Assembly (NCBI RefSeq): GCF_033153115.1
Contig: NW_026889790.1
Span: 434,001-498,000 of the forward strand
DNA length: 64,000 bases
Source: Saccostrea echinata
Taxonomy: Eukaryota
Direction: 5' to 3'
Numbering within the stretch: the stretch's first letter is position 1; each line of letters begins with the position of its first letter. Below the pieces are notes generated by a model. The model saw nothing but the letters and a program-made list of their open reading frames with translations. It was not told where the DNA came from and searched no databases. The translations under genes were made by a program, and so were the position numbers. This document shows, one piece after another, positions 1 through 47,382 of the stretch.

Positions 1-790
1 CAAAGTTTTACTTTGACTTAATGATAGATTGCATTTGCTAACAAGGTCATTGTATCGACCAAAGAACTTATGAAATGATGACTTTAAACGAGACTCTTGA
101 TATTCTTGTTTCATCAACTTGTTTATCAATAACTTACCTCATTTTAGAAATTGTTCATACATAGAACATTCTCTTGCATATCGAATCAACTGAGAGATAT
201 ACACCCCATTTGCAGGTGATAAGGGTATATTGCTGCATAAGTAAGGGAAGTTGACAATTGAAAAGTTAAAGTCATCACGTTTATCATAAAGCTTTGTTGT
301 TAGATTATCATTAATGTCTTTTTCTAGTGAAATATCCAAATATGAAACAGATGTGTCAGACTCTGTGGTATCTTTTATTTCAAGCTCACAGGGATATATT
401 GTGTCGACACATGAATGGAAAAAACTATTGTTTAGTTAATTGATAATACGTCATTAATATACCTAAATGTCAAATTGAAGGCCACAGCAAGAGATTTCTT
501 TTTCTCATGTATAAGATTTTGAATAAATTCTGCTTCATATGAATACAAAAATAGGTCTGCTAACAACAGAGCGCAATTGGTACCCATGGGAATTCCAACA
601 GACTGTTTGAAGACCTGGTCTCCAAAAACCACATAGATATTGCCAATCAGAAACTCAAACATCTTTTTAATATCAACTTCAGAGTTGTGTGTACAATCAG
701 AATGTTTTTAACAAAATAATTTTGCAAAGGACCAATGACAAGGTAAGTAAATTTACGAGTTTCATTTTTATTGAAAAAGCAAATGTTATG
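1..790 (-). mobile_element. Degenerate Penelope-like retroelement RT fragment in ADPRH intron 2
   Basis: Broken ORFs 432-662 (QSVGIPMGTNCALLLADLFL...FRYINDVL; catalytic YxDD decayed to YIND) and 139-339 (TTKLYDKRDDFNFSIVNFP...GVYISQLIRYAR) resemble PLE RT and thumb motifs; frameshifted. Confidence 0.75.
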
Positions 791-1240
791 GCCAAGGTTA
801 AAGTTGGGCAATTTTTGGGGTAAGTTTGGTAATTTTTGGTAGAAGTGGGTCAAACTCCAAGATCAACATCAAGGTTAAATATGTTGGTATCAAAAGGAAT
901 GTCTTGTCACAAGGAATACAATATGAAAGCCATAGTCCCAACCAATCAAAAGTTATAGGCAAGGTTAAAGTTTTTGCAGACAAACAGAAAAACAGATGGC
1001 CGAACAGGGCAAAAACTGTATACAGTTAAACTTCGGTATCTCGAACACTGATATCTCGAATACCATGGATATGTCCAAGTGATTTGGAAGTCCCAACTAC
1101 TAATTCTTTAAGTATTGTACACTCGATATCTCGAATCATCAGATATCTCGAAATTTTTTCTCTGTCTCATCAAGTTTGAGATAACGAGGTTTGACTGTAC
1201 CCCAAATCTTCAACAGGGGGGCACAAAAAAAAAAAAAATA
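783..1240 (+). mobile_element. 3' part of a HINE/Helentron-type non-autonomous element (same family as 54943-59000), interrupted by a MITE
   Basis: Monomer sequence gtcttgtcacaaggaatac...atatgaaagc, ACAG-type microsatellite, terminal hairpin cccc-aaatcttcaaca-gggggg followed by an A-run. Confidence 0.75.
1023..1197. mobile_element. Tc1/mariner-pogo type MITE, TA TSD
   Basis: Imperfect 24-bp TIR CAGTTAAACTTCGGTATCTCGAAC, TA on both sides; further copies at 30547 and 36346. Confidence 0.85.
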
Positions 1241-1299
1241 AATAAAAAAGTAAAAATCAACCATTTATTTCAAAAAGAAGCTAGTTAAAGAAACCTTAC

Positions 1300-1353
1300 C
1301 CTCAGATGTCGCTAAATGCATGACAGTGTCATCACTGACTATCCACTTTGGTG
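1300..1353 (-). CDS. ADPRH: ADP-ribosylarginine hydrolase, coding exon 2 (gene continues past the window start)
   Basis: T-tract TAG acceptor; encodes PPKWIVSDDTVMHLATSE with the catalytic SDDT motif; GTAAGG donor. Confidence 0.93.
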
Positions 1354-1549
1354 CTAAAAAAAAAAAAATGTACAATGCAAATTGATTTACAGAAATATTT
1401 AAAAATCATTTTGAAATTTATGACAAAAGTTACTCAAAGCCCTGATTTAAAAAAAAAAGATCAGCAAAATTGTTGATCAAGCTGTATGCTAATTTTAAAA
1501 TTTTATACCAAATGCAATCAATAACTTAATATAAAAAGTATTATCTTAC

Positions 1550-1709
1550 GTTTCACTTTAATAGCGTTTAATCCTCCTAATGCATTTAGCTCCTTTATAA
1601 TTTCTTTTCCGTGATGACAAAACTCCCAGGAGCCATTCTTATACCCCAGAGCATCTCCAGCCGCACTCAGGACCATAGCGGCCTCATAGCGCAGGGGCAA
1701 GGAAACCAT
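1550..1709 (-). CDS. ADPRH: ADP-ribosylarginine hydrolase, coding exon 1
   Basis: [30 protein letters not shown] matches the ARH1 N-terminus ([20 protein letters not shown]); GTAAGA donor at 1549, phase 1. Confidence 0.93.
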
Positions 1710-2042
1710 GTCTGGATTTGATCTTTTCTTCTACTAAATTTAATTATAGTTTCCTGTTTTGGCCAGTGCACAAAAACGGGTTCTGTGAATTCATATAAAT
1801 ATTAGATACAGAAAGTAAATTCAAACCCTGATTTAAAGTAATCAAGTAAAATCAATATAAATTACAAACCAAAAATAATGAAATCGTCTTAGTCTTACAT
1901 TGTTGACAACAGTCAGAAATACAGAAATAGCCATGACACAAAACGTAAACAAAGTAACTTTCCTTTTCACTTAAAAGCGAAAGTATGTCAAATACGAAAT
2001 AATATTAAACGAATTAACAAGAATCTATTACACCGGAACAAT
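1710..2042. promoter_or_regulatory. Probable bidirectional promoter and 5' UTRs between ADPRH and the Cys-rich gene
   Basis: Only 333 bp lie between the two divergent start codons (1709 on -, 2043 on +). Confidence 0.55.
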
Positions 2043-2176
2043 ATGTGCAAGAAACGAAAAGGCAAAAATTTTCTGTATCTTTTATTAATTATGCTTACTT
2101 TTAGCTTCTGTAACTGTGGATGGACAGAAGATGGAGGGTATATTGGACTCTATCCTGGCGGGTGCACCGTAAAAAG
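2043..2176 (+). CDS. Small secreted cysteine-rich protein, exon 1 (signal peptide)
   Basis: MCKKRKGKNFLYLLLIMLTFSFCNCGWTEDGGYIGLYPGGCTVK: basic n-region, hydrophobic h-region, small-residue cleavage site; AG|GTATCT donor, phase 2. Confidence 0.75.
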
Positions 2177-2231
2177 GTATCTCCCACCACGAAATCTACA
2201 TACACTGTAACTTATAGTAGTGTAGTAAACG

Positions 2232-2347
2232 CAGGAGTTCGCAATTTTATCAGTAAAGTCAATAGAAATCACTCGCTAACGCATAGCTCATGGCTTGGTC
2301 AATCGAGTGATTTCTATTGACTTTATTGATAAAATTGCGAACTCCTG
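2232..2347. mobile_element. Short fold-back element
   Basis: About 44-bp arms caggagttcgcaattttatc...cactcg with a near-perfect reverse complement around a short loop. Confidence 0.7.
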
Positions 2348-2373
2348 TGGTAGTAAAAATGCATATGTAAATA

Positions 2374-2802
2374 TAGTTAGAATATTCTAACTGTGTCTCG
2401 GGACAGGCCCTCACCACAGTTAGAATACGTCCCATATACTTGCAATGTAGCAAATCGGAGTGGATCCACTCCGAAATGATTCTGAAGAATACAAAATGAG
2501 TTGCACTGAAAATAACTACCAAATTAATCATAACAAACCTTTTTGAGATTGTATATGCCTTTTAACCTAAAAATTAATCCATATATATACGAAAATTCAA
2601 CTCATTTTCTCAACGTTTTTTCCTCGCTTCAAATTTAACGCCATGTTGACATTCGGAACTCTCTGGATTCTTCATAGAAAATGCACAGAGTTCGAGTTAT
2701 CGCCCGTGTTTATTTTGCTACATTGCGAATACACGGAACGAATTCTATCGTTAAACCGGGTCCGTAGGACAATATCATTTTAACGATAGAACATTCTATC
2801 TA
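2374..2802. mobile_element. Non-autonomous element with long imperfect inverted ends
   Basis: ttgcaatgtagcaaa / tttgctacattgcga and agaat...ttcta palindromes at both ends. Confidence 0.5.
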
Positions 2803-2923
2803 ATGTAAATATTACAATATACTTAAATATTATTAATATGTAATCATTCTGAAATAATTGTATATGCCCCCTGAGGACCCTTGACTGGTGAATAAACATA
2901 TATATATATATATATATATATAT

Positions 2924-3897
2924 GAATGTCAGACACCTCGGCCCATTGACATTTCGGTCCAATGACATCTTGGCTCAGACGGGTTGGCCCAAGATTTAAG
3001 ACAGCTCGGCCCATACATAAGACACCTCAGCCCAAGCAAAATTTTACCATGAAATATATATTTCCAATTTTTGGACTTGAATTAAAATGTTTATTGAAAA
3101 AAGTATATGAATAAACTATCAAGATTTTTTTTAAAAGATCTTCCATGAACACATTGATGATATTCAAAGAATGAGAAGACAATGCTATTAATTAAAGTGC
3201 TAATTGATAAACAAACAAAATGCCGCGGCGCATCCTTTAGAGTGTCAAGTGTTTGTTTTATTGGTGACAACAGGGGGTTAATTATGAGCAGACTAAATCG
3301 GGAGACAGTAATTAAATACATTTAGATCCATCGAATATTTTCTCATTTATTTCTTAAGAAAAACATTTCCCTTCCTAAATTTGTTATCGTCGCTTATAAC
3401 TAGTTTGAGTCCATTTTTTTTCCCAGGCTACTTGTATCAAAGCAAGTACATGACCAATCTCCTATGTATGAGCCAATATGGTAAAATGTGGTACTTAACA
3501 CGTCTTTTCCTCTTTTTTTTGGCTAATACAAGATTAACGCGCGCAACCGTGATACAGCAGAATTTTTTTTTTTACATTTTCCACAAGAAATAGTTGTAAT
3601 TGAAAGATTGATCTAATCAAGTTCACTTGGAAAAATAAAACGATTATATGTATCAAAAACCCCCATTTTTTATTATTTTTAAAAAATTTTTAATCGTCAG
3701 AAAGAATAATAACACCAATGATAACATCAATTCAAACGCTGGGTTAATCTGTTCATATTTTTCCATCGTAAAATTTTGTTTGGGCCGAGGTGTCTTTTAT
3801 ATGGGCCGACGTGTTACCAATCTTGGGCCGACCTGTCAGGGCTGAGATGTCAAGTGTGACGGGCCAAGGTGTCATTGGGCCGAGATGTCTGTCTACC
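2924..3897. mobile_element. Non-autonomous TIR DNA transposon inserted in a (TA)n tract
   Basis: About 120-bp imperfect TIRs built of repeated GACAYCTCGGCCCA motifs; (TA)n on both flanks. Confidence 0.8.
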
Positions 3898-4599
3898 ATA
3901 TATATATATATTATACATGTATATATTCACTATGTCCTTTCACCCTGACCTCATAGTCACCCACCCGTGTCAGCACGCTTACCAGTCAGTCGTGTCCTAC
4001 CAGTCAACCCTTTCACCATGTTCTTTACCTATTCTTATATGTATTGTATGTACTTGTATTTCTCCAACATGTAAACCTGGGTGTTTTGTTGTCACCTAAT
4101 ACAGGTATGCAACATTTAAGTAAAGTCCCCTATTTTACTACAGTTGGCACAGACAGAGGCACTTGTTTTCAGGATGGCGTGTTTTGTATATTGTGTGTTT
4201 TTCTATGTCTGTCTGAATACACTCATTAAAATAAAAATCAGGCTAAATTAGCATTTTATTTCATGTTTCTGACTCTGTGTATAAAAAGACAAAAGGTTCG
4301 ACAGTTGCCATCTCGAATTCCAGGGGTGCCTCCGTTCACACTTGATTTTATTCAAAAAATCAATTTCTACCCTTTTTCTACTAGTTTCAGGTGAGATCTA
4401 GCTTTGTAAATGATTGAATAACTCCCTTCAAATATCTGCTGATTTGTACTTGCCATATAAAACATGCAGTAAACCAAAATGTCCTCGATACCTAGCACTG
4501 AAACTGAAATAGATGGAAGTAACGATTTCTAACTTTGTAAAGTGTAGAGGCATTGCAGAATTGCATGGAAAGTCTAGAGAGGTCATATTTCTGTTATTT

Positions 4600-6420
4600 T
4601 TAACTGTATTTTGTAAGCTGGACATGAGTATTGTCACATTTAGCACAGTATCCAGAAGTGTAGATTAAAAACTGGTTGTTACAGCTGATGGGTTGATTAA
4701 CATAGTCTGCAGGCCAGTATCCTATCTGCTGTAAACTGTTTGAGATACTGTTTGGGAAGAAGGACTGTTTATAAACTAGAGTCTTTAAATATGGTACCAA
4801 GAATCAGTAGGTATGTCCTTTGGCTGCAGACATCATTGAATTTAGCTTGATGGAATAGCCAGAGGCAGTGCACTTTCCTGTATATCATTACAGCTTTGCA
4901 TCTGGCTCATAGTTCCTCCAAAGATGTCCACTGGAGAGTTTCTAGAACTGATGTTAAACAGCTAGTTTGTGAGCAGTTTTGAGCTGCCCTAGCTTCTGGA
5001 TGTTGTGAGCTGTATGCAGGTTATGCGGGTCCCAAACAGTACGTGCATACCACTGAAGGTCTTACTAGCATAGTACAGCATGTTGCTTTGCAACTTCTTA
5101 TGCAGGCTGTAAGTTGCATTGTATAAAAGCATATAGGTGGAACTGGCTTTCTTTGTAATGGTTTCTATGTGTTCATTCCAACTGAGGCTCTTGTGGATGC
5201 TAACCCCAACATATTTGCAGAGTCCACTACATTTACTTCTAACCTAAGGCAGTGGATGTTGAAAGAGCTGATGTCAGACTTAGGGTTTTTTTTTAACTCA
5301 CAGTTGTTGGCATTTGCTGTTGTGGAACTCCGTCTGCCAGTCTGTTTCCTACTGTAGTAAACTATTCAGTCTTTTTGAAGATAAGTTATATTATTTGAGT
5401 AGATCTTGGCAGAGGACACAATCATTAGTCAGCAGTCAAACATTGGAATGATGGACATATTCTGGTAGATCGTTGATAAAGAGGAAGAACATCAGTGGTC
5501 TGAACATGCTCCCTTAAGGCATTCCTGACTGGACAGTGGCATTGCTGGAGCTCTTCTCATCTACTTACACTCCCTGGATCCTGCCTTTAAGGAAGTTCTT
5601 GGCCCAGTCCAGTTAGACCCTCTGAACTCATAATAGTGAAGTCTCTCAAGGGGATCAAATGCTTTGGAAAAATCTCAAAGTATAAGGTCTGTCCAGTCAC
5701 TGAGATCCATATTTTGGTTAGGTCCTGAACTGTCAGGATCAACTAGGACTAGCATGATCTGTTTTTCCAGAATCCATGTTGAGCATCAGTAATTCATGCA
5801 TCTCTAGGAGTTTCGAAATGTGCTGCTGCATATTAAGTGCTCAAGGACCGTACATGTAACTAAAACAGCCAGTAGTTAGCAACTTAGCTGCTTAAGACTT
5901 TTTCCCTTTGTTAAGGATTGGTACTATATTAGCTTCTTTCCAGTTTGATGGCAACTTCCCTTGCATGATGAGGCCTGGAAGAGTGTTGTTAAGATAGGAG
6001 CTAGGTGGACTGCTTGCTCGTTAAAAAGACAAGTTTGTGTTTCGTCTTGTCCAGCTGCCATATGGATGTTATTAAATAAGGTTGTCTAACAGTTTACGAA
6101 CCCCATTTTCTGTCACTGTGATGTTATTCGTGGTAGGATGACTTTGATGTTTGCTTGGGATGATATTCACATCTTCGTTGCCATTGAAGACTCATGATGA
6201 GAATTGTCTATTCAAGATGTTTGCCTTTAATTCACTATCTAAATATGTTAGGCCATCTACCTCCTTAAGTGGTGCAACTCTGATTCGCATCTTTTTGCTC
6301 TTTATAAATCTTGGCTTACTTGTCAGATCTGATCTTATCATATCCTCTGTGTAGTACTTATAGGACTTCTTATGCTCTCTTTATAAGTCTGTGTAGTTCT
6401 TTTAGGACTTCTTATGCTCT
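4600..6420 (-). mobile_element. Decayed CR1-group LINE (RT and 3' region)
   Basis: Minus-strand remnants QHGF (~5775), DFSKAFD (~5665), SGMP*GS (~5520) and C-terminal YKQSFFP; many stops and frameshifts. Confidence 0.8.
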
Positions 6421-6426
6421 CTTTAA

Positions 6427-6848
6427 GGTGGAAGTAAATACTTCACACTGTTAGGGGTATTTTAGTGTCATCCTGCAAACATCAGGTATTTTAGTGTCAG
6501 TCTGGCTTTCAAAGTGAAAGGTTGTTACTTTCAGTTCTTAAAATTTTTTCAAACCTTACATCACCCCATCAAAATACATCATATTCTATGACAGAGTTTT
6601 ACTTATTAAAAATTAAGATGACTTGGAACAATTCTTACAGAATGCTGGTGGGAAATAAAGGACATTAAACATAGTATCCCTATGTTTCTTAAAGTTTTTT
6701 GTGTAGTTTTAATTTTTAGCACAGTAGTAGCTTGTCATATTCTTATCTTTTTCATTTGGTATTGTACTAGAGCTCCAATGATGACAATGGTGCACTGAGC
6801 TACATTATAATCAGTCTTCACCTAAAATGGGTCTGATTTATGACCACC
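6427..6848. mobile_element. Possible Kolobok-like non-autonomous element
   Basis: TTAA|GGTGG ... CCACC|TTAC ends; weak TIR. Confidence 0.3.
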
Positions 6849-7360
6849 TTACTTTGTTCTTGCTCTCTCCATTAACAATTAATTCAACAATTAATTTCTA
6901 CTTTTTATTAATATTTAGAAATCTTCCACATGTATACCCATTGTTACAAGCCACAGCCCAAAGTGTAGGATCCTCTCCCATTCTGGAGAGAGTTATAGCT
7001 TGAGATGATGTTTACTCTCTTCCATTCAGTTTCTCTTCCATTCCAAATTCACATTGAAGGTATGTGGTTTCAGTTTCCCTTCTAGCTTCTTTTCTCTTCT
7101 TTGTAATACAAAACCATGTTACTGGTATGCTTGTCTGAGCAAGAACATGTTAACTCACTATGGCCTACATATATTAGCTTGTGCCATTTTCTGTTTCCTT
7201 AGTTCTTTATTCTTATGGAAAATTCAAAGTAAGAATTTTATTGAGTTAATCAATAATTATTCCACCAATACTTGTGTTCTTACACCATTTTATAATTTGT
7301 GGGATTGTTAAGTTTTCAGTTTAAATTCTTGATATGATCAGTATGTTCTATTTGTTTTAG

Positions 7361-9780
7361 TGACTGGGTGAATTCAAAAAAAATGACCACCAAACTGAAT
7401 TTTTTTGGCAAAATTCAACTACTTATAACATATTTTTCACTTATATCATCATATTGCAAATGCATTCTAGTTTAAAATCCTGAAGTGGCAATAGAATAGA
7501 CAATTGGATTAAAAAGTTTCAGAATTTTTATTAGTAAAATTTCTTTTGAAAAAAGAAAATATCATTACACCTTAAAAGACTTTCTAAAATACATAATCTC
7601 AAGAAATTATAGTTTTTTATGCTTCAAAATGGTAAAACGGGTATAAATGATTAAATCTAGACCTTGAATGAGTATCTTCTCTTGTACATGTGACAAAAAA
7701 TTGGCTTTTTGATTGTTATTTTACATTATTTTTTCAATTCTGGTTTGAAAAGTTTTCATATGAAAAAAATATGAAGCAATAAAATTCCCCAAAATTCACT
7801 TTTTTGTCCGTTCAAGTCAATTCTTTAAATCTAAGCCAAAAAAGAATTGATATATACGAGTTCTCTTACAAAAAATACTAGATTTTGAAGTCACCCTATG
7901 TTACATTATTGTGTTGCACTCCTGACATCTGATATGTATTTAATTTAACATTGTTTTAAAAATTATAACACACAATAGCCCATTCTTACTTTGTAAATCA
8001 ATTTGTCGTGTTGATATTTTTCATCGTTTACAGCAGGTTTTTCATATTTTGAAGACCTTAAAACGATTATTTGCAAAGTGTAATATATATAAATTGTATT
8101 TAAAATATATGTGATATGATGAAAACTATTCCCTGAATTGACTGTAAAATTTCTGTAATTTGTTGATAGACATAGTGTTTTGAACATCAAATAGTATCAA
8201 GCATTTTTTTCAACTTATTTTTTAGAAAACATAGTTAAAAAGCATCGGTAATTATGAAGCAGTTTTGTTGCACTCCTGACTGCAGTAAAGTTTAAAATTA
8301 AAACCATAGAACACAAAAATTCATAAAGTGTTGGCAACATCAAGTGGTAATGAAATTGTGCAATACTTATAGTCCAATACTTCATAATTAAAACAGATGA
8401 AAGTATTTAAAATTCGCATTTTATCTGGAATTATACCCTATTTTATGCCAAAAAAACTAGCTTAAATGTATATTTAGAAGATAAAATATATTTTAAAGCA
8501 TATTTTCCTTTAGAAGACAAACACAGTAACCCACCAGAAAAATTCTACTCATGATTTTTTCCTTATTTTTATTCTTATTGGATGATTTATAATTCTAACA
8601 TATTTGTTGCACTCCTGACCAAAAGCATTGGGGCCTTTAAAGTAGAATTGTGAAGTGAAAATTACATAAGAACTTGTTCTGTTGTTTCAGTGAAGTTGAG
8701 GAGGAATTACTTGAATTTTATGACAATCTTTTAGTGTGTTTATTTTTAACGTTCATTAAAAAAATCACAAAAAAGATAAAAACACATCTGAATTGATATA
8801 ATTGAAAAAGGAAGGATTTTGATCATAAAACTGTCAATAATATAGCATTAAATTATACAAAAAGATCATTATTAATTAATGAATACTTCTAAGCATGAAT
8901 AGAAGTCTTTTCGTCACAGAACTTGAATCTTTAAAAAAATGTGTTGCACTCCTGACCATAGAAATATGGATCTGAAGCACAGACAGATCCTGTAATTGAT
9001 AAATCTATTTGGTAAAAATGTTCTTTGTGGCTTTATTTCCCAAAATAAAAATCAGAAAATCATATAATGATAATAGTTTTTTCATGCTTGGAAGCAAAAC
9101 ATCAAATGTTGCACTCCTGACATTTTTGGGTATGCACATATACTTGACTCTCATTAATGCTGCTTGTGATTTATATAACATTTTAAAGTTTTAAAATGTA
9201 TATCAGTTATTATTTTACACTTCCAAAATTCTTTTTTGTCTTAATTTTCTATCAGAATTTTACAATCGATGTTTTTTTGGCAACACTACATTTTTTCTGT
9301 TGCACTCCTGACATGGTATAACATTTTTTTAAACATCAGCCATGACCACAACTTGATTAAACAAAAGTTTCAACAGTCCACATTTAAAGCTCAATACTTT
9401 GAATATTATCAGGAAAGTCTTTATTTTCAACATGAAGCATTATTTTTTATTTCACAGATCTCCAAAAAATATTGAAATTTCAAAATGTCACAAAAAGGTG
9501 TTGCACTCCTGACAATTTTAGCATCATTTTTGGGCATAACTTTTTTGTTAATTGAGATATCAACGAGATATTTGGCAGGTATTTAGACACTATCTAAAGA
9601 CATATGCTGAGACATAGAAATCTATTTTCATTGCCTGTATTTTTAGTGTGGGTTGATAAATATGCGTTTGGTCATTTTTTTTGAATTCACCTGACTGCCC
9701 AATGGATGAGAGATGCATGCATTCAGTAGAGGAGACAGTTTGTCCTAGTGATCATCAAAATTTATGCAGGTGTACTTTAG
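7361..9780 (+). CDS. Cys-rich protein exon 2 (7361-7366 plus 9698-9780), interrupted by a 2325-bp transposon
   Basis: Acceptor tttgttttag at 7360. Removing the element and one TGACTG copy gives an 89-nt phase 2-to-1 exon, SDCPMDERCMHSVEETVCPSDHQNLCRCTLG, with donor G|GTTTGT at 9781. Confidence 0.75.
7367..9691. mobile_element. 2325-bp non-autonomous TIR DNA transposon, 6-bp TSD, with seven internal 15-bp direct repeats
   Basis: Perfect 23-bp TIR GGTGAATTCAAAAAAAATGACCA; TSD TGACTG at 7361-7366 and 9692-9697; no long ORF inside. Confidence 0.92.
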
Positions 9781-10417
9781 GTTTGTATTATCATATAGAT
9801 TAAGATTTAAGGTGGATAGACCCTCATGTAAGAGAGGTAACTCTCACTGGGATAATGACATTCCTTTTAAAAAAGAAAAGATCAATTTACATGTAAAAGG
9901 CCATTTCTGTCAAACTTTGCACAAAAGGTCATTCTGAAATTGCCCACATTTCAAATATAATCTAGATGTCTTTTCAAAAGTCATGATCATTAAAGAAAAA
10001 TTTTATGTAAGTTAACAGAGGGCTTATAACTGATTTACTCCATGTACAACTTCATCTCTCTCTCTCAGACAGAAAAAAATCTTGTTTTGGATATAGAAAA
10101 TGTATAATATTTCAACATATGTGTTAATGTTTATAAGGTTTAATTAACGTTAATAAAAATAATAATAATCAGTTGGAGAATAATCTTAAACATCACTGAT
10201 CTGAAGCTTATTTTTATCCTGGAAAGAGTAGTCTGAAGGACAGGTGATACAAACCTGTACATGCTTCACAATAAATGTAAAAATCATTTTAATAAAAACA
10301 AAAGCCAAAAATAAGGTAATTGTCAGAAGAATCCAGAACAGTATTTTTGGAAATGTGTTATTTATTGTTATTATAGAAAAAAAAAACCCTAGACTTTAGT
10401 ACTTTTTTTCCTATTAG

Positions 10418-10512
10418 GTTGTGAGATTGATAATCTAATTGTCCGTTATGAACAGTGGCGACCCATTCCAGGAAAAGGATTCTGCAAGTGTATCAATTCT
10501 TTAACAAATGAA
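10418..10512 (+). CDS. Cys-rich protein exon 3
   Basis: tttttttcctattag acceptor and GTAAGT donor; open only in the required phase-1 frame: (G)CEIDNLIVRYEQWRPIPGKGFCKCINSLTNE. Confidence 0.75.
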
Positions 10513-10781
10513 GTAAGTACATATGTAGTGATATTCAACACAAAGAAATTATAAATAAAATAGATATTGAAAGTTTATAAATGTAATGCAGTCCTTTAAA
10601 ATCAGCATACATGTACATGTACGCTAGTTTTTCAATGTTTATATGCATTTTCTATTTGAAAAAAAACAAAACAAAACTTCAATGTATTTTCATTTTAATA
10701 CTTTCAATATATATGGCAATATGGCAAATATTTCACTTAGATTTAAGTTGGCAATTTGTTTTATTTTTTGATTATGTATAA

Positions 10782-11002
10782 TTTTTAGGTCACCTGAGTC
10801 ATTCAGGTGACCTATTCTGTCAGTTTTTGTCCCTCCATTTGAGCATTTTCAGCTTCTTCTCTAGAACCACTGAACAATTTCAACCAAATGGCACATGGCA
10901 TCTATGGGTAAAAGGGAACAAAAATTATGAAGCAGCTACTCATCACAGATGATTGAAATTTTAGCACACTCTTTGTTTAGGCATGCCATATGGTGGGATT
11001 CA

Positions 11003-11050
<48 letters not shown>

Positions 11051-12297
11051 CATTGTCCATCCGTCCGTCTGTAAACTTTTCACATTTTCAACTTCTTCTC
11101 AAGAACCACTGGGCCAATTTTAACCAAACTTTGTACAAAGCATCCTTGGGTGAAGGGGAGTTTAAATTCTTAAAATGAAGGGCCAAGTCCCCTTCAAAGG
11201 GGAGATAATCAAGAAAATACAAAAATTGGGTGGGGTCATTAAAAAATCTTCTTCTCAAGAACCACTGGGCCAGAAAAGCTGAAAATTATGTGAAAGCATC
11301 CTGGGGTAGTGTAGATTCTAAACTTTTCAAATCATGACCCCCAGGGGTAGGGCGGGGCCACAGTAGGGAATCCAAGTTTTACATTGAAATATGTAGTAAA
11401 AATCTTTATAAATCTTCCTCTCAAGAACCACTAGGCCAGAAAAGCTGAAACTTATGTGGAAGCATTCTGGGGTAGTGTAGATTCTAAATTGTTCAAATCA
11501 TGACCACTGGGAGTAGGGTGGGGCCACAATAGGGAATCCCAAGTTTTACATTGAAATATGCAGAAAAAATCTTTAAAAATCTTCTTCTCAAGAACCACTG
11601 GGCCAGAAAAGCTGAAACTTATGTGGAAGCATCCTGGGATAGTGTAAATTCTAATTGTTCAAATCATGACCCCTGGGGGTAGGGCAGGGCCACTATAAGT
11701 ACTACAAGGGGGGGGGGAGGGAGAAATCAGCTGAAAAACAGCAAGGCCAAAGTTACTCAGGTAAGCATTGTGGCCCATGGGCCTCTTGTTCCAATCTGAT
11801 GTCAACTTCATGTTCATCCGTGTGTCTGTCCGTAACAAATTTTCGTCACAGTTTTCTCAGCAACTACTCGTCACAGATCCTTGAAATTTTAGCACACTCT
11901 TTGTTTAGGCATGTCATACTGTGGGATTCATTGATTCCATTTTGTATGAATCCGATGTCAACTTCCTGTTTATCCGTGCGTCTGTCCATTACAAATTTTT
12001 GTCAGTTTTCTCAGCAACTGCTCAGTAGATTCTTGAAATTTTAGCACACTCTTTGTTTAGGCATGCCATATGGTGTCAACTTCCTGTTTATCCATCACGT
12101 CTGTCTGTAACAAATTTTCATCGCAGTTTTCTCAGCAACTGCTCAGAGCAGATGCTTGAAATTTTAGCACACTCTTTGTTTAGGCGTGCCAAATGGTGGG
12201 ATTCATTTTTGTATGAATTTGATGTCAACATGAGAGTGTATATTCACATCAGAGCAGGGGTATTACGAGTGAGCATTTGCTCACAGACTTATTGTTA
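10782..12297 (-). mobile_element. Composite of nested HINE/Helentron-type elements
   Basis: Hairpin aggtcacctgagtcattcaggtgacct at ~10787; a second family with repeats gaaattttagcacactctttgtttaggc at 10955, 11883, 12035 and 12158, split by the element at 11003-11790. Confidence 0.75.
11003..11790 (-). mobile_element. HINE with 166-167 bp tandem monomers (Cg170-like oyster satellite)
   Basis: Hairpin agctcacctgagctgaaagctcaagtgagct, GTCC microsatellite, agaaccact at 11258/11424/11591, terminus ggcccatgggcctcttgtt. Confidence 0.85.
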
Positions 12298-12976
12298 ATC
12301 ACTGTAAATAATGTAATTGATTGGTGAATTGAATAAAAGAATTATACAAGAATTTTTAATATATAATACAAAAATGTTCTTTCATAGTTTTTTTTATGGT
12401 CAGGTAGATGTAAATAAAAGATAAATAAAAATGAGACAAAAACACCTTATCTTTGTATATTAAATGTTCTTCAAAGACCAAGAAAAGCTAATGTAATGTG
12501 CTCAAGCAATACTGATTTGTTTAAATCTCTATGATGATAGTGACAAATGGGGGTGTATTAGTACTGGCAAATACAGGCAAGGAAATAGATCTGCTTAATA
12601 TAATTTGTTATGAGCACTAGACTAATTTGTTGATCCCTGACCATTCCTTTTGGGCATTATATCTTCATCTATCAGTGTTTGTTTTATTTTATACTTCTTT
12701 GGATCCTTTCAGTGTTTATATTATACTCAGGTGACTATTAAGACCTTTGGGCCTCTTGTACATTCATTTCTAGATGTTTACATCTGAATGCAAATATTGC
12801 CAAGTGAAAGGTCAAGCACCTAATGTGCATGTCAGTTTACCATGGCTGTCATTGTATCTGGCGTCAGTGGGCGGGGATTGTGGAAATAAACATGGAATGC
12901 CTCTTGTATTTCATATCTATTAGACAGCATGTTTGATGTATATTTTTTCACATATAATCTTGCCCTAATTTAAATG

Positions 12977-13141
12977 TAAGGAATCACTTTCTAGTTTGTT
13001 GGGTATGCCAGGGATATTAACAGCAGTTGGAAACATGGGATAATTTATGCAGGAGGGGCTTTACCCATTATGTAAATTATTCCATGTTTCCATCTGTTGT
13101 TTATGCCCTAGCATACCAACAAACTAGACAGTGACTCCTTA
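12977..13141. mobile_element. Fold-back (possibly Crypton-derived) element
   Basis: taaggaatcactttctagtttgttg ... caacaaactagacagtgactcctta; inverted over most of its length. Confidence 0.7.
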
Positions 13142-13232
13142 AATATATTTTAGTGACTATGAATCAATTCTGATGGGTATTTGTAAACATATGTACATGT
13201 ATAAAATTCAGTGAATGTTTTTTTTTTTTCAG

Positions 13233-13262
13233 TCAGACTGTGTGGAGCACTTAGACTTATGA
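13233..13262 (+). CDS. Cys-rich protein, probable last exon
   Basis: Long T-tract CAG acceptor; phase 0 SDCVEHLDL*; gives an even count of 10 Cys in the mature chain; AATAAA follows. An alternative last exon is 12774-12923. Confidence 0.55.
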   Translation, partial: SDCVEHLDL

Positions 13263-13597
13263 ATGAGACAGATGAAATAAAGAGATGATGAACATTTTCA
13301 TGAAGTTTAAACTTAAAAGATTCTCATAAATGCTGATGTTGAGCAAGTTTTTTTTTTTTTTTTTTAATTTCATATGTGTGCTCTAATGAGACAATACTTA
13401 CACATCTTCAATAATCCATTTTATCAAAATTTTAAAGTTTGAACTATATTACTTAAAAAATATTAAGGTCACAATGAACCAGGTACAACAACATTATTTT
13501 CTGGTTTCTACATCTTTTTACTGTTAACTTAATAGAAAGAAAATGATACGTTACAGTTATGTATTTGTGCCTTTGCACTAATATTTGATGCATTATA

Positions 13598-13764
13598 CAG
13601 TAAAACACGCTTATAGCTAACACACTTATAACGAATTACAACAAAATAATTTTCATTCCCTGTTACTTTGAAATATATTGTAAACTTAACGGATATGACA
13701 AATTACACTTATAACGAAGCAAAATCGTCCATCCCTGGAACTTCGTTAGAAGCGTGTTTTACAA
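13598..13764. mobile_element. Tc1/pogo-type MITE
   Basis: TA|CAGTAAAACACGCTT ... AAGCGTGTTTTAC TIR with a decayed right tip. Confidence 0.7.
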
Positions 13765-14192
13765 TTTTCTACATTATAAATTAACTATTCAGATAAAAAA
13801 AAATGCAGCTTCTTAATGTTTTGAATATGAATTTTTGTTGAATGTTATTTATATTTTAACATTATTATTTATTTTTTTAATTATATTTTTCTCTTCTTAT
13901 TTACATAATTATACACACACACACCATATATATAAAAGATTTTTTAGGGTTCCAGGAAATTTGTGCAATTAATATGAAAATATTTACATTTCCAAGTATT
14001 TTTCCTTAGGATTCTTTGCAAATTAGAAGGCTGTTCATTTTCCCATGAACTACCATGGATGAGCATGAATATATCCATTGTTACATCATAATACTGTACA
14101 TGACGTCAAAACTATAGTGCAAACTGTTTTGCTTTAAAAACGACAGTTGAATGGCGTTATTTGTGGTAACTCATCAGAAAATAATGTAAATA

Positions 14193-14355
14193 TAAGAAAT
14201 GAATTTAATTTTTGAAAATTCATGAGGTACATGAACTACAACGCTTCACGCCGGCATATTTATCATGAAGCGCTAGCGCGCTTCATGAAATATGCTGGCG
14301 TGAAGCGTCGTAGTTCATGTCCTCATGAATCTTCAAAAATTAAATTCATTTCTTA
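14193..14355. mobile_element. Fold-back (possibly Crypton-derived) element
   Basis: About 80-bp arms centred on gaagcgctagcgcgcttc. Confidence 0.75.
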
Positions 14356-15775
14356 AATATATAATGATTTATTTTGTATAATGTACATGTTATTTTCTCT
14401 GCATTGCTTTCTTTTTTTTTTTTTACTGTTATTAGTTTGGTGTATTAATGTTTAATAAAACTTAATATGTAAACATACATGTGACTTTTATTTATTTTTG
14501 ATTGAATGCAAAGGTAGACTTTGTCTTTTTACATGCCCTGTCAGTTGGTGCTTTGTTTGTTTAAGGCATTAAGTTACTTGATGAATTTAACTAATAAGTT
14601 GATATATTTAATAATAAACTTTGAATTAATTTTTTGCCTAACTGAATTACTTTAAGTCCAGCTCTCTCTCTCTCTCTCTCAGCTGTCTCTATCTGAAGGC
14701 AACTGTGGATTGCTGATTGATAGTAGAATTTTTTTCTTTTATTTTAAACAAATACTGGACACTTTCAAAGTTCAGACTAAGTTACAGATAAAAATACACA
14801 TGGGTTATAAGCAGCAAATTTAAACACTGACTGGGACCCTCTTCCAATCGATTCTTCTTAAACCTCGTAAGAAGTAAGTTAAAAAAAAAAAACGATAAGA
14901 GTGCAAGTTTTTATTTGTCTTTCTTTCTTTTTTTTTTTTTAATGACATATTAGTGTCAAGAATTATTATGAATAAGTTCAACTATGATTTAGTTTTATAA
15001 TTTTTTTTTTGAAAATTATTCAACACTTATCACTCAAACAATGCAAGGTATTTACAAGGTTGCGGACATAAGCACATAATTTACCAAGAGAACGAGGGGT
15101 TATTAAGGGATTCCCAGAAAACTAAGAATTTGTACAAATAGTTCTTCTCACAAAGTTGGAGATGAAATTCATTTCTTCGAGTGTCCAAAATATAATTTAC
15201 TTAGACATAACATGTATGACAGTATACAACAACATTGTTTAAAAAAAATAATAACTTCTTGATAATATGAACAAATTAATGTACAATGCACCGTCCCGTT
15301 GTATCTTTTGCAATTTAGTGGAATATATTTATTCAGTATATATGAAATGTGTATATATATATGTCTGTGTATACATGTACATATATCTCTGGCTTTTTGC
15401 ATTATGGTACACGGTGGTAGTTGTTTAAAACTTGATAATGTATATTTTAAAATTTTACATGTTAGCAATTATCTCAACTTATGAACCATGTGTAAATTGA
15501 TTAAGTATATTAAAATACTGATGTACATGTATACTACTATCACATTTGTTAATAATTATTATACTTATATGTACTGTATAATAATCAAGTACGTTTTATG
15601 CTCAAAAGGGTCCTATTTGGAATAATGTAGCGGGAGGTAACTCTTTCACTTAACCCGACAGGTGCAATGCGTATCTAATGAAGCGAGTCGACTCTGGCAT
15701 ATCGGTAAACAGACGCATATGATCGGCGTTCGAATGTAGTGGCGGTTTTATCATACAGGGTCCTCATAACAAACC

Positions 15776-16118
15776 ATGCCCAATCGCAGAGAAGAACACG
15801 GAATTCAAAAGCAGCAAACAGTGACATCGCGGTGCCTGGCCATTGTCTTGAAATTTGAAAATGGAGACAGGTGCGAGAGTGATGTGAAGGAAGAGGGTTT
15901 TAGTGGAAGAGATATTTTAGACGATTTTAAGCTGCGGAATAAGAGTTGTTATTGGAATCCAGCTTTGTTGGAAAGTATAAACAGTTTGGAATATTTGGGA
16001 TTTGTGTCTCCCTGTACATTACTAGTGGGAGGATCAGAACTTCACCTGGAGAACATCAGAACAGCCTGGGGGAGGCGAGTTTTAAATGACCCCTCGGATT
16101 TTAGTATTCAAAGCATAG
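15776..16118 (+). CDS. STOX1: Storkhead-box protein, coding exon 1
   Basis: YWNPALLESINSLEYLGFV...AWGRRVLNDPSDFSIQSIG resembles the STOX1 N-terminus (FWNARL...AWRRRALRPPRGFRIRAVG); G|GTGAGT donor, phase 1. Confidence 0.9.
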
Positions 16119-25536: not shown

Positions 25537-26385
25537 GTATGTAATGAAGTTAAGTGACATTGTGTTTTACTGAAGAAATTTATTTTCTAGCAGTTAATTA
25601 TCGTTTGTCTGGTTTTATTGGATAACTGTTTAACCAATTTTCTTTATAATGTTATTAAAGCTAGAGCCAAATTATTGAAGTTTGAAAGGAATATTTTTAT
25701 CATGTTTATGTTGTTGGGATAAGTTTGTCGCTAATACATGTATTTTGAATTGGAAAAATGAAATATAAGAGGTGATTGAGTAAAAACTGAATAAAACTTG
25801 TCTGTACAGTAAGAAATAATATACCTGTATTCACTCTTAAATACCCTGTGTATTGAAAAAAAAAAAAGAATTAAAAAATTCACCTAGTGTAATACCATTC
25901 AAGATGATATTAGAGTAAATGTTTTCTTATGGATAAGAAACCTAATCTTTTTGTTATTGAAAAAATCATCATTTCCTTTGAGTTAGATAACATCAAAGTA
26001 TAATTTAAGTCTTTAGACTTAAGTTTGAATTATCGATTTAAAAGTCTCTAAGTTTTGTGAGTATTATGTAAAAAGCTAATAGGATTTGTACAAATTTTCT
26101 GTCTGATTCAGTGTTAACTGTTAAAGCCAGGTATTGTATTTGCAGAATGTGTCTCAATTAACTCAACCAGTTCAGATTATGTGACATTATCTGTAATGAG
26201 TAGTTCATTAATCCCACTCAAGTTACCGACAATAGCTTCATTTTCATACATGTATATATATTATAATAGATTTCAAATAAAGGGAGCTAGTAACTTAGCT
26301 CTAAATTATCATGTGAAATCTGAAATGAAAAATTTACTCTGTAACCTTTTCAAGGCTAATAATTTCTTGTTGTTGAATGTTTTAG

Positions 26386-28019
26386 GAGAGAAGAAGTCCT
26401 TGTTAGCAAAGCTTTTTGGGAGAAAGAAGAAAAAGACTGATACTCCAAAAGAACAACCAAAGAAAGTGGAGTATGCCACATTCTCTGACCAGTTTCCACC
26501 TCCAGAGTGGGGATGGTATCAAGACCAAGTGGAAAAACAGCAGCGGATACACAAGTGGATGCAGCAAGTTCCACATCATCCACACGTCCACCACCAGCAC
26601 TACGACCGTGTCCATCTTATCCACCAAGGTCATCCACATCATTCGGATTATCACTCAGTGAGATTTGGACATGGACCAATCAGAAATGATGTTATATATG
26701 GAAGACATGTCCCACAGCATGAAAATCACTATCATGTGCCACCAAGGATGAAACTAAGAAACAACCCTCCACCTCCACTGGATGATGATTATGAGGAAAT
26801 CCAGGATGTGGATGCTAACAGTAGATTCAGATCCACCCTACCAGCACATCATCATCATCCACAGGAAGTTGAACATCACAGGAGAATGTCTGAAGGTCGA
26901 CATACAATGAGGAGAAAAGAGAAATCCAAAAGAATGTCCTTGGATAGGAGAGTGGATAGAGACTATGAAAATGTTCCAATGTGTTCAAACTATCCCTCCC
27001 CAGCATTTCCCTATCACACAGAAAGTAGCCATAATATGCACCACAACAGCCATCCAGTCACACACCCTCTCTACAGCTCAACTCCGCGAGTACCTGGAAT
27101 GTGGCAGCAAGCTCATGAATCATATTACCCACAAGTCAATGCAGAGGAAGTCCATCAACATCAGTGTACCACTCAAAAATCCAAAAAGAAATCTCACCGC
27201 AGACATGGCCAGTCAAATCACAGACAGATGGAAGAGCATTACAGACTGCCTGCAAAGAACACGTCAATTTCTATTTCTCACGACAGCGGAGTGAATCTGA
27301 TTGGCCTCCAGACAGTGCATTATAAACCTTCGCAGGACACCCATCACAGAAGAAGAGTTCACGACGACATGTCCATCCGAAATAACCTTAGGAATGACCC
27401 TTATGGAGACTTGGATGAGGACCTTCCTAATTCCAGTGGTCAAGTTGTGTATGAAGTTGAAATTAACAAACGTCCGGAGCCAAGGACCAGAGAAAATGAA
27501 TATGTTACCATGGAGACAGACTCCAAAAAAGACAATGAGAAGAAGAGAAACAGCTGTAACTCTGACAGTGCATTAACTTTCAGTGAACAGAGCTGTGACA
27601 CAGTCATAAAAAAGGAAGATAAAGACGTAGAGGACATTACAAAGGAGACTTTAGAGGTCGTTTTGGGGGATAGTGGCTTCAGCTCACCCCGAGTCTGTGA
27701 TGAAAGCTCCCCAGAAATGGAAAAGCAGAAGATCAAAAGCAAAGTGAAAGAACTTGAAAAGGGAAGTCACTCAGACCTCTGTGATAAAAATGTCTACCAA
27801 AAATCTGATGACAGTTCTCCTGAAATGCGTGAAAGTCGCTCAAGTGACAAGGAAAATAGAATTAACATGATAAACAATTTAAAACAAGTTCAAGGTGACT
27901 ATGGGGTGCTTACTCATGTCAACCCAGTCAGTGGCAGAATCCCCCTTTACCCTCAAAACACAATAATCCAACCAGTTCAGAGGAAATTCAGCTTTGAGGA
28001 TGATTATGGATTCTTGTAG
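26386..28019 (+). CDS. STOX1: Storkhead-box protein exon 4 (last); total 896 aa
   Basis: tttag acceptor; conserved TFSDQFPPPEW motif (FSAQFPPEEW in STOX proteins); His-rich low-complexity tail; TAG stop. Confidence 0.92.
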
Positions 28020-46970: not shown

Positions 46971-47121
46971 CTGAAGAGAGAGAAAAAAATCTTACCTAAA
47001 GTTACAAATTACTTAATATTTAAAACACTGTTATATCATTTTATCTAATTATATACAAGTTAATTTTCTTATAAATCATAACCCTTAAAGTTACAAAAAA
47101 ATTGAAAGCATGTCACAGTAC

Positions 47122-47382
47122 CTTCGATCTTTGCTTGCTGATCTTGATCTGTCCTTCTGTCTTGACCGTGAGCTAGATCTGTCCTTTTGTCTTGACCTTG
47201 ACCTAGATCTACCTCTCTTTCTTGATCTTGACCTAGATCTGTCTCTTTTTCTTGATCTTGACCCAGATCTATCTCTTCTTCTTGACCTAGACCCAGATCT
47301 GTCTCGCTTTCTTGACCTTGACCCAGATCCGTCTCTTTTTCTTGACCTTGATCTGTCTCGTTTTCTTGATCTTGACCTAGAT
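47122..47382 (-). CDS. SR splicing factor exon 5 (RS domain, 30-nt tandem repeat)
   Basis: 261 nt, RSRSRSRKRDR... repeats; TAG acceptor, GTACTG donor. Confidence 0.88.

What the first reader, a model, noticed from the sequence alone, without database searches (positions are those of the whole stretch)
2043..13262. Hidden gene for a small secreted 10-cysteine protein, absent from the ORF track
Seen: four short exons (2043-2176; 7361-7366 plus 9698-9780; 10418-10512; 13233-13262) with canonical splice sites and matching phases 2, 1, 0. They join into a 115-aa protein: MCKKRKGKNFLYLLLIMLTFSFCNC-GWTEDGGYIGLYPGGCTVKSDCPMDERCMHSVEETVCPSDHQNLCRCTLGCEIDNLIVRYEQWRPIPGKGFCKCINSLTNESDCVEHLDL. It has a signal-peptide-like N-terminus and an N-glycosylation sequon (NES). 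Inference: a C-x5-C-x5-C-x8-C-x7-CxC six-Cys module (knottin/EB-like spacing) followed by a GC...CxC...C four-Cys module (FN1/VWC-like spacing). I do not recognise the family. It could be an undescribed bivalve secreted inhibitor, immune or shell-matrix peptide.
Basis: partly seen in the sequence, partly recalled or inferred. Interest (0 to 1): 0.8.

Follow-up and report, generated by a model that had tools for sequence, protein, structure and literature searches.

The report
Annotated oyster 10-cysteine gene, transposon-split here
The four exons are a real rock-oyster gene for a small secreted ten-cysteine protein that several bivalve groups share and nobody has studied; it is already in the public annotation, and the copy in this window is broken by a transposon.

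Summary
The four exon peptides are exact substrings, at residues 1, 48, 76 and 107, of the 115-aa RefSeq protein XP_061180955.1 (uncharacterized LOC133189588, Saccostrea echinata). That protein is called on the other copy of this locus in the same assembly, contig C19. So the gene is not undescribed as a model.

In the window (contig C41), a 2,325-bp terminal-inverted-repeat transposon splits exon 2. C19 is collinear with the whole window (96.7-99.8% identical in its blocks) and has the empty site. Reading on into the element stops after 37 codons, so the window copy is very probably a null allele.

The protein belongs to an unnamed family. Named members come from oysters, a pearl oyster, scallops, an ark clam and Solemya. 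A profile search of 1.84 billion proteins gave 13 hits and no named non-bivalve. It has no Pfam match, no PDB sequence match and no hit in five paper searches. An AlphaFold model (pLDDT 77) gives weak but consistent hits to fibronectin type I and VWC modules for residues 72-114.

Transcription in this species was not shown. Function is unknown; a secreted binding or signalling protein is my inference. An earlier scan note (s1-803170) had already flagged the transposon.

The parts
2043..2176 (+). Exon 1, coding part. It holds the start codon, the signal-peptide-like region (residues 1-25), the conserved mature N-terminus and the first conserved cysteine (C41). A GT donor follows at 2177.
   Evidence: the peptide equals P0008 residues 1-44; hydrophobic maximum 2.64.
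2177..7360 (+). Intron 1 (phase 2). The AG acceptor is at 7359-7360.
   Evidence: It is collinear with C19 with 4 mismatches and 1 gap in 5,867 nt (window 1500-7366).
7361..7366 (+). The first 6 nt of exon 2 (TGACTG). This is also the left copy of the target-site duplication.
   Evidence: The empty site on C19 is shown.
7367..9691 (.). A 2,325-bp non-autonomous terminal-inverted-repeat transposon inserted in exon 2. It has perfect 23-nt inverted ends at 7367-7389 and 9669-9691. Its boundaries can equally be read as 7366-9692 with a 4-bp duplication.
   Evidence: absent from C19; 2,030 first-look candidates, and 38 of the 40 scored candidates cover the element end to end at 96-100% identity (one is this copy); flanks of five other copies; reading on stops after 37 codons.
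9692..9697 (+). The right copy of the target-site duplication (TGACTG).
9698..9780 (+). The rest of exon 2. It holds cysteines C47 (its codon spans the insertion site), C53, C62, C70 and C72. A GT donor follows at 9781.
   Evidence: the peptide equals P0008 residues 48-74.
10418..10512 (+). Exon 3. It holds cysteines C76, C97 and C99 and the invariant R84, Q87, W88 and R89. The AG acceptor is at 10416-10417 and the GT donor at 10513.
   Evidence: the peptide equals P0008 residues 76-106; invariant columns.
13233..13262 (+). Exon 4, coding part. It holds the last cysteine (C109) and the TGA stop at 13260-13262. The AG acceptor is at 13231-13232.
   Evidence: the peptide equals P0008 residues 107-115.
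13276..13281 (+). AATAAA, a candidate polyadenylation signal 14 nt after the stop. Its use was not tested.
   Evidence: Read directly. No read evidence: depth is 0 in bin 13100-13299 in all 4 runs.

Best explanation
Shown:
- Positions 2043-13262 hold one haplotype copy of a real, single-locus, four-exon gene of Saccostrea echinata. Its intact copy on contig C19 is RefSeq LOC133189588 (XP_061180955.1, 115 aa).
- The product has a hydrophobic leader of about 25 residues that diverges between species. It is followed by a well conserved mature chain of about 90 residues with ten conserved cysteines.
- It belongs to an unnamed family found here in oysters, a pearl oyster, scallops, an ark clam and the protobranch Solemya.
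- In the window copy, a young and very abundant 2.3-kb inverted-repeat transposon sits 6 nt inside exon 2.

Inferred:
- A message spliced at the normal acceptor would run into the element and stop after 37 foreign codons. It would keep only 1 of the 10 conserved cysteines, so this allele is a null. The reference animal carries one broken and one intact copy.
- The mature protein is secreted and locked by five disulfides. Its C-terminal 40 residues form a fibronectin-type-I-like 'finger'. It acts outside the cell by binding another protein, as a ligand, cytokine-like signal or modulator.

My odds: real gene 0.97; null allele 0.85; FnI-like C-terminal fold 0.5; extracellular binding or signalling role 0.35.
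For: Gene model. The exon peptides equal P0008 at residues 1, 48, 76 and 107, and the splice dinucleotides are all GT or AG. P0008 is named XP_061180955.1 / LOC133189588 of S. echinata and was seen on one contig of 6,385,996 nt, which is the length of C19.

Second copy. Searches found exons 1-3 twice, at 100% identity, on C41 and C19 only. The whole 64-kb window is collinear with C19:3065040-3126043. The 11 blocks of at least 800 nt listed include 10 collinear ones at 96.7-99.8% identity.

Transposon. It has perfect 23-nt ends, and the empty site exists on C19. There are 2,030 first-look candidates; 38 of the 40 scored cover the element end to end at 96-100%, one being this copy. The stop falls after 37 codons.

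Family. One search gave 7 proteins at E<=1. One search gave 11. One search gave 13 of 1,835,955,588 representatives at E<=0.001. Nine of the ten conserved cysteines sit in the same alignment column in 11-12 of 12 sequences. The tenth (C62) is in column in 9 of 12; the three scallop sequences carry it a few columns earlier, beside a gap.

Leader versus mature chain. Against P0008, the leader is 5-8 of 19-25 identical in the 10 non-Saccostrea rows, while the mature chain is 41-71 of 83-90 identical. The scallop leaders end in ALA, AWA and TSA directly before the conserved G-W start.

Splicing in relatives. Logan contigs of 912-1,479 nt encode the protein without interruption. Other Logan contigs of 5-8 kb carry single exons that run into unrelated sequence at the same boundaries (P0028, P0029, P0031, P0032).

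Fold. The AlphaFold2 model built on 12 sequences has mean pLDDT 77, with blocks 71-110 at 90-94. VIA-align against 48,161 chains gave 9 with Z>=2. Of these, 5 are fibronectin type I modules (Z 2.0-2.8; four of them align 37-42 residues at 2.0-2.7 A over model residues 72-114, the fifth aligns 56 residues at 11.8 A), 1 is the NELL2 VWC region (Z 3.4, 61 residues, 4.9 A) and 2 are MUC2 C-terminal domains. The re-alignment of Foldseek's list gave the same picture.
Against: - Transcription in S. echinata was not shown. None of the 5 runs found is on record as RNA.
- In one search, none of the 15 listed joints and none of the 32 listed contig pieces lies on an exon or an exon junction (125 joints and 8,519 pieces were not shown). 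Run X1 has a 252-nt piece inside intron 2, so these runs may be DNA. Depth at exon 4 is 0 in all 4 runs.
- The only hint is run X5, with word depth 16.9 and 17.8 in the exon 2 and exon 3 bins and 0 in the two intron bins between them. The tool itself warns against reading depth this way.
- The fold evidence is weak. No Foldseek hit reached E<=0.001 (best 0.2). All Z values are at most 3.4, far below the typical best Z of 7-8 that the tool quotes for models without clear matches. The other four AlphaFold models scored 58-68, and a first run with 6 sequences failed at pLDDT 41.9.
- No Pfam fn1 or VWC match at E<=10.
- Nothing bears on function: no expression data, no partner, no literature.
- Whether C41 and C19 are haplotypes or a very recent duplication was not settled.
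Confidence: 0.6

Rival explanations
1. It is an effector rather than a signal: a secreted protease inhibitor, an antimicrobial peptide or another immune effector.
For: It is a small, secreted, disulfide-rich protein from a bivalve. The Atlas feature search lists clusters with Kazal, Antistasin and Dickkopf_N domains at scores of 0.75-0.81.
Against: - Those scores are within the range that shuffled proteins reach (tool note).
- There is no Pfam match to any inhibitor or antimicrobial family.
- S. echinata has one locus. Mature-chain identity to P0008 is 41 of 90 for Solemya and 46-48 of 87 for scallops. From general knowledge, this is unlike fast-evolving, multi-copy immune effectors.
- The model has no helix in the mature part, which argues against the helix-containing defensin and macin type of fold (recalled).
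Confidence: 0.15
2. It is a structural or matrix protein of a bivalve-specific tissue, such as shell matrix, ligament or gill.
For: The family was seen only in bivalves. FnI-like modules occur in matrix proteins (fibronectin entries).
Against: - There are no low-complexity or repeat regions of the kind I recall as typical of shell-matrix proteins.
- No family member carries a matrix-protein name in any source.
- No paper holds its gene or protein identifiers in the main text.
Confidence: 0.1
3. The window copy is a working paralogue and not a broken allele. The element would be removed from the message, or an alternative exon would be used.
For: The exons of the window copy are still identical to the intact copy. 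A GT lies at 7368-7369, just inside the element.
Against: - No AG lies just before the point where coding sequence resumes, so precise removal by splicing is not possible.
- Identical exons, perfect inverted ends and a perfect duplication are what a very recent insertion would leave.
- P0008 was seen on one contig only.
- The 64-kb collinearity, with divergence varying from 0.2 to 3.3%, fits two haplotypes.
Confidence: 0.05
4. The model is a chance assembly of short open frames and not a gene.
For: The exons are short (30-134 nt), and no transcript evidence for this species was obtained.
Against: - It is identical to a RefSeq protein of the same species.
- Orthologues at 41-90% identity have all ten cysteines conserved.
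- Intron positions are conserved in other oysters.
- cDNA-like contigs exist in relatives.
Confidence: 0.02

Closest known systems
Fibronectin type I ('finger') module, as in fibronectin, factor XII and (recalled) tissue plasminogen activator
   Same: Residues 72-114 of the model superpose on FnI modules with rmsd 2.0-2.7 A over 37-42 residues, which is nearly a whole module. There are four cysteines arranged as C, a long hairpin, C-x-C, a short loop, C. An invariant tryptophan followed by a basic residue sits on the hairpin. The FnI consensus I compare this with is recalled, not taken from a call.
   Different: There is no Pfam fn1 match at E<=10. Z is only 2.0-2.9. The first two cysteines are 20 residues apart, which I recall as shorter than in FnI. 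The module stands at the end of a single small protein, behind an unrelated six-cysteine part, and is not in a tandem array. The disulfide pairing is unknown.
von Willebrand factor C (VWC) domain, and single-VWC secreted proteins such as arthropod Vago
   Same: It has ten cysteines, an all-beta elongated model, and is a stand-alone secreted protein. The best single structural row is the VWC region of NELL2 (Z 3.4, 61 residues). The Atlas structure rows list CCN5, Sog and VWC2L (TM 0.27-0.37). Vago is described as a virus-activated secreted peptide that acts through JAK-STAT (abstract of PMC4602278, seen in the listing).
   Different: There is no Pfam VWC match. The rmsd is 4.9-5.1 A and TM is below 0.4. 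There is no adjacent cysteine pair near the C-terminus, which I recall as part of the VWC signature. The FnI-like part is C-terminal here, whereas I recall it as N-terminal in VWC. No link to antiviral signalling was tested.
The 12-cysteine bivalve module noted earlier in this scan (s1-803016)
   Same: It is in the same genome, it is a bivalve-restricted secreted cysteine-rich module, and the follow-up agent described it as a distant unnamed relative of the VWC / fibronectin-finger type.
   Different: It has a different cysteine count (12 against 10). It is multi-gene and modular, whereas this is a single locus. I saw no sequence and did not compare the two.

Membership tests
Unnamed bivalve family of LOC133189588 orthologues | Full-length sequence similarity with the ten cysteines and the conserved motifs | tested here: met
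   The exon peptides are exact substrings of P0008. Profile E-values are 1e-37 to 1e-55 for the named members. There are 26 invariant columns in 12 sequences.
Fibronectin type I (Pfam fn1) | Match to the family profile | tested here: not met
   0 Pfam families at E<=10 for P0001 and for the three exon peptides.
Fibronectin type I (Pfam fn1) | Four cysteines in about 40-45 residues, arranged C ... C-x-C ... C, with a conserved aromatic residue on the hairpin (consensus recalled) | tested here: met
   C76, C97 and C99 are present in 12 of 12 sequences and C109 in 11 of 12. W88 and R89 are invariant. The one miss is a truncated Pinctada model.
Fibronectin type I (Pfam fn1) | The finger fold | tested here: inconclusive
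   Five of the 9 chains with Z>=2, out of 48,161, are FnI modules. Z is only 2.0-2.8, and four of the five align 37-42 residues at rmsd 2.0-2.7 A. The best Foldseek E-value is 0.2. The query is a predicted model only.
Fibronectin type I (Pfam fn1) | Disulfides 1-3 and 2-4 | not testable with these tools
This needs mass-spectrometric mapping.
VWC domain (Pfam VWC) | Match to the family profile, and the C-terminal adjacent cysteine pair (recalled) | tested here: not met
   There is no Pfam hit. No two cysteines are adjacent in P0008.
VWC domain (Pfam VWC) | The fold | tested here: inconclusive
   NELL2 gives Z 3.4 and rmsd 4.9 A over 61 residues. CCN3 vWC gives Foldseek E 3.8. Atlas TM is 0.27-0.37.
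   There is no Pfam hit. An Atlas cluster with EB domains scores 0.81, which is chance range. No knottin appears among the chains with Z>=2. The N-terminal part is modelled less well, at pLDDT 55-87.
Growth-factor cystine knot | Six knot cysteines, with a cysteine between the two ring segments (arrangement recalled) | tested here: not met
   No cysteine lies between C76 and C97 in any of the 12 sequences. There is no Pfam hit.
Macin-type antimicrobial peptides (my own recalled lead) | Match to the family profile, and a helix packed on a sheet (recalled) | tested here: not met
   There is no Pfam hit. The model has no helix after residue 23.

The most novel reading that the evidence does not exclude
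The family is a previously unrecognised, bivalve-restricted extracellular signalling ligand, hormone-like or cytokine-like. Its invariant mature N-terminus and its FnI-like finger would engage a conserved receptor. On this reading, the transposon allele in the reference S. echinata is a naturally segregating knock-out, and oysters homozygous for it would reveal the phenotype.
Probability: 0.2. Interest if true: 0.6.

Novelty: new variant of a known kind. Interest (0 to 1): 0.3.

Why it matters
As a gene model it adds nothing. RefSeq already lists it, as 'uncharacterized', in S. echinata and at least eight other bivalves.

What is new here is the family-level picture:
- It is a single-locus secreted ten-cysteine protein kept from the protobranch Solemya to oysters.
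- It has no Pfam family and no hit in my paper searches.
- It has a probable fibronectin-finger-like end.

Conservation this deep in a small secreted protein suggests a fixed binding partner, so it is a reasonable candidate for a bivalve-specific signal or matrix modulator.

The transposon-split allele is an ordinary example of the heavy load of transposon polymorphism in oysters. It is also a ready-made null allele that could be genotyped by one PCR and used to test function.

Tried and rejected
- Paralogues: the only other match to exon 1 in the genome (C9, E 0.265, with a stop) is chance. Exons 2 and 3 match only C41 and C19.
- Pfam on the exon peptides and on P0001: nothing.
- PDB sequence search with P0001 and with profile A3: nothing.
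- First AlphaFold run with 6 sequences: unusable, pLDDT 41.9.
- ESM Atlas: no feature score of 0.9 or more and no TM of 0.5 or more.
- Macin, cystine-knot, VWC and EB readings: rejected or left open, as set out in the membership table.
- CgIFNLP, the oyster interferon-like protein: I considered it as a possible identity. PMC8218723 (passages read) gives a band of about 15 kDa but no accession or sequence in the main text. The primers are in a closed supplement, so this is untested.
- Paper searches for six LOC/UniProt identifiers, six protein accessions and a 10-residue motif: 0 papers each. The search for single-VWC/Vago in oysters gave no paper on this protein among the 10 listed of 135. Supplementary tables, where such identifiers usually sit, were closed.
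- Rfam on positions 1-16000: 0 matches.
- The sigma-70 promoter scan does not apply to a eukaryote and I ignore it.
- Reads: no usable transcript evidence for this species.
- Pfam on four neighbouring ORFs: only Rho_GDI at 62753-63067.

Full report
**Observation.** The flanking dinucleotides are GT at 2177, 9781 and 10513, and AG at 7359, 10416 and 13231. The exon lengths of 134, 89, 95 and 30 nt add up to 348 nt, or 115 codons plus TGA. Each exon was searched on its own, and the joined step was left out.

**The split exon.** Exon 2 is interrupted after its sixth base. Positions 7367-7389 and 9669-9691 are perfect 23-nt inverted repeats, and TGACTG stands on both sides of them. The same assembly holds a second copy of the locus on contig C19, where exons 1-3 are 100% identical. 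There, window 1-7366 and window 9692-10386 abut with a single TGACTG. So this is a transposon insertion with its target duplication, and C19 shows the empty site.

The element is 2,325 bp with no long ORF. It carries about seven copies of a 15-nt core at intervals of roughly 165-390 nt. It belongs to a very abundant young family: 2,030 first-look candidates, and 38 of the 40 scored candidates cover it end to end at 96-100% identity, one of them being this copy. Five other copies are flanked by 4-bp AT-rich duplications if the ends are read one base further out. On that reading, this copy can equally be described as 7366-9692 with a 4-bp duplication.

Reading on from the normal acceptor into the element gives 37 foreign codons and then a stop. 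No AG precedes the resumed coding sequence. The window copy is therefore most probably a null allele.

The whole window is collinear with C19:3065040-3126043. Identity falls from 99.8% at the gene end to 96.7% at the far end, with a few insertions or deletions of about 400 bp. This is the pattern of two haplotypes, but read depth would be needed to exclude a very recent duplication. Within the gene region, the aligned stretches around the element differ by 4 mismatches and 1 gap in 5,867 nt, 0 in 695 nt, and 1 mismatch and 3 gaps in 3,316 nt. The insertion is therefore recent.

**Identity.** A search with the open frame around exon 1 (scored on the 44 exon residues) found P0001, a 115-aa 'uncharacterized protein LOC134277080' of Saccostrea cucullata. 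Its 90% cluster also holds P0008, XP_061180955.1, 'uncharacterized protein LOC133189588 [Saccostrea echinata]'. P0008 was seen on one contig of 6,385,996 nt, which is exactly the length of C19. So the genome is S. echinata, the model is right, and the gene is already annotated, on the intact haplotype.

**Family.** Searches with P0001, with profile A3 and with profile A2 against 1.84 billion representatives gave 7, 11 and 13 hits. Named members are:
- S. cucullata and S. echinata
- Crassostrea virginica
- Magallana gigas and M. angulata
- Pinctada imbricata
- Pecten maximus (two loci)
- Ylistrum balloti
- Argopecten irradians
- Tegillarca granosa (model correct for the first two exons only)
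- Solemya velum (two loci)

All are called uncharacterized or hypothetical. Five of the 13 hits are Logan contig products and one is an ENA contig product, none of them with a name. One hit (P0025) matches only the translated 3' tail of cDNA-like contigs and is an artefact of my profile. No named hit is from outside Bivalvia. Mussels and heterodonts did not appear, but only predicted proteins were searched.

In the 12-sequence alignment, 26 columns are invariant. Nine of the ten mature cysteines are in column in 11-12 of 12 sequences. C62 is in column in 9 of 12, because the three scallop sequences have it a few columns earlier beside a gap. The leader is hydrophobic in all 12 sequences (Kyte-Doolittle 11-residue maximum 1.75-3.64) and is poorly conserved. 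The mature chain starts at an invariant glycine and is 41 of 90 (Solemya) to 86 of 90 identical to P0008.

**Expression.** For relatives, Logan contigs of 912-1,479 nt encode the protein from leader to last residue without interruption (P0003-P0005 and cluster mates). Logan contigs of 5-8 kb carry single exons that break off at the same boundaries as here (P0028, P0029, P0031, P0032). I take the short contigs to be spliced cDNA.

For S. echinata itself I have no transcript evidence:
- The five runs found hold 9-18% of the words of 9692-10512, and none is on record as RNA.
- Of the four runs laid on 7300-13299, none gave a listed joint or contig piece on an exon.
- X1 has a piece inside intron 2.
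- X2's depth runs on past exon 3 into intron 3.
- Only X5 shows depth in the two exon bins and none in the intron bins between them.

That is a hint and nothing more.

**Fold and family tests.** There is no Pfam family at E<=10 and no PDB sequence match. With 12 sequences, AlphaFold2 gave a mean pLDDT of 77. Residues 71-110 score 90-94, the first six-cysteine part scores 55-87, there is a leader helix, and the mature part is all-beta.

Foldseek found nothing at E<=0.001. Its weak top rows are mostly fibronectin type I pairs, with mucin, VWF and FCGBP assemblies, NEL and CCN3 vWC. The independent VIA-align search of 48,161 chains found 9 with Z>=2: five FnI-containing chains, the NELL2 VWC region, two MUC2 C-terminal entries and one fungal effector. 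Four of the five FnI rows cover model residues 72-114 with 37-42 residues at 2.0-2.7 A; the fifth (2ec3) aligns 56 residues at 11.8 A.

The absolute scores are low, as they must be for a 40-residue module, and a predicted model is being compared. However, 8 of the 9 rows are FnI modules, the NELL2 VWC region or mucin C-terminal domains, which is not what chance rows look like. I read the last four cysteines as a probable FnI-like finger (odds about even). The first six cysteines form a part with no recognised relative. Membership of fn1 or VWC as sequence families is not met.

**Mechanism.** The following are shown:
- a leader followed by a conserved mature start
- ten conserved cysteines
- one locus in S. 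echinata
- deep conservation within bivalves

The following are inferred:
- secretion
- five disulfides
- a finger-like binding surface
- action by binding an extracellular partner

From general knowledge, FnI and VWC modules work by adding a strand to a partner or by clamping growth factors. The stand-alone VWC protein Vago is a cytokine in arthropods (abstract of PMC4602278, listing). I therefore favour a ligand or modulator role (0.35) over an immune effector or inhibitor (0.15) or a matrix component (0.10). None of these was tested.

**Novelty.** The gene model is already public. The family has no name, no Pfam entry and no hit in my five paper searches (plus the passages read). Supplementary tables were closed and may list it. 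An earlier scan note had already flagged the transposon (s1-803170). Another scan note describes a different bivalve cysteine-rich module with the same weak VWC/FnI likeness (s1-803016).

Noticed in passing
window 7367-9691; loci L013-L017: The transposon family is very abundant and young: 2,030 first-look candidates, and 38 of the 40 scored candidates cover the element end to end at 96-100% identity, one being this copy. In five other copies the ends read GGGTG...CACCC with 4-bp AT-rich target duplications. The superfamily was not determined. About seven copies of a 15-nt core lie inside the element.
   Followed up: partly
window 10700-12500 (intron 3), tandem array at 11242-11697: There is a 166-bp tandem repeat (2.7 copies, 90% matches) and a 123-bp one at 11956-12198. 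The summed word depth of contigs reaches 195,370 in run X5, so this is one of the most abundant repeats in these oysters. It may be related to the roughly 166-bp oyster satellite and pearl-type elements that I recall.
   Followed up: no
window 1-64000 against G000:C19:3065040-3126043: The whole window has a collinear, inverted second copy on another multi-megabase contig. Identity falls from 99.8% to 96.7% along the window. The window has extra sequence at about 49259-49670 and 58576-59004. This means haplotype duplication in the 923-Mb assembly, or a very recent large duplication.
   Followed up: partly
window 62750-63067 (-): This is the last exon of a Rho GDP-dissociation inhibitor gene (Pfam Rho_GDI, E 3e-25).
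   Followed up: partly
window 26181-28019 (+): A 612-codon open frame, rich in histidine and charged residues, with no Pfam match. It is probably a large exon of an uncharacterised gene.
   Followed up: partly
window 47069-47594 (-): An open frame full of RS/RD dipeptide repeats, like the tail of a serine/arginine-rich splicing protein. The opposite strand also has a long open frame, as such repeats often do.
   Followed up: no
proteins P0026/P0034 (Pecten maximus) and P0027/P0035 (Solemya velum): Both species have two loci with close locus numbers, so they are probably tandem duplicates. P0033, from an unnamed ENA contig, carries two exon-3-like stretches in one called frame.
   Followed up: no
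They are not in the window, and they are present beside both copies of the locus.
   Followed up: partly
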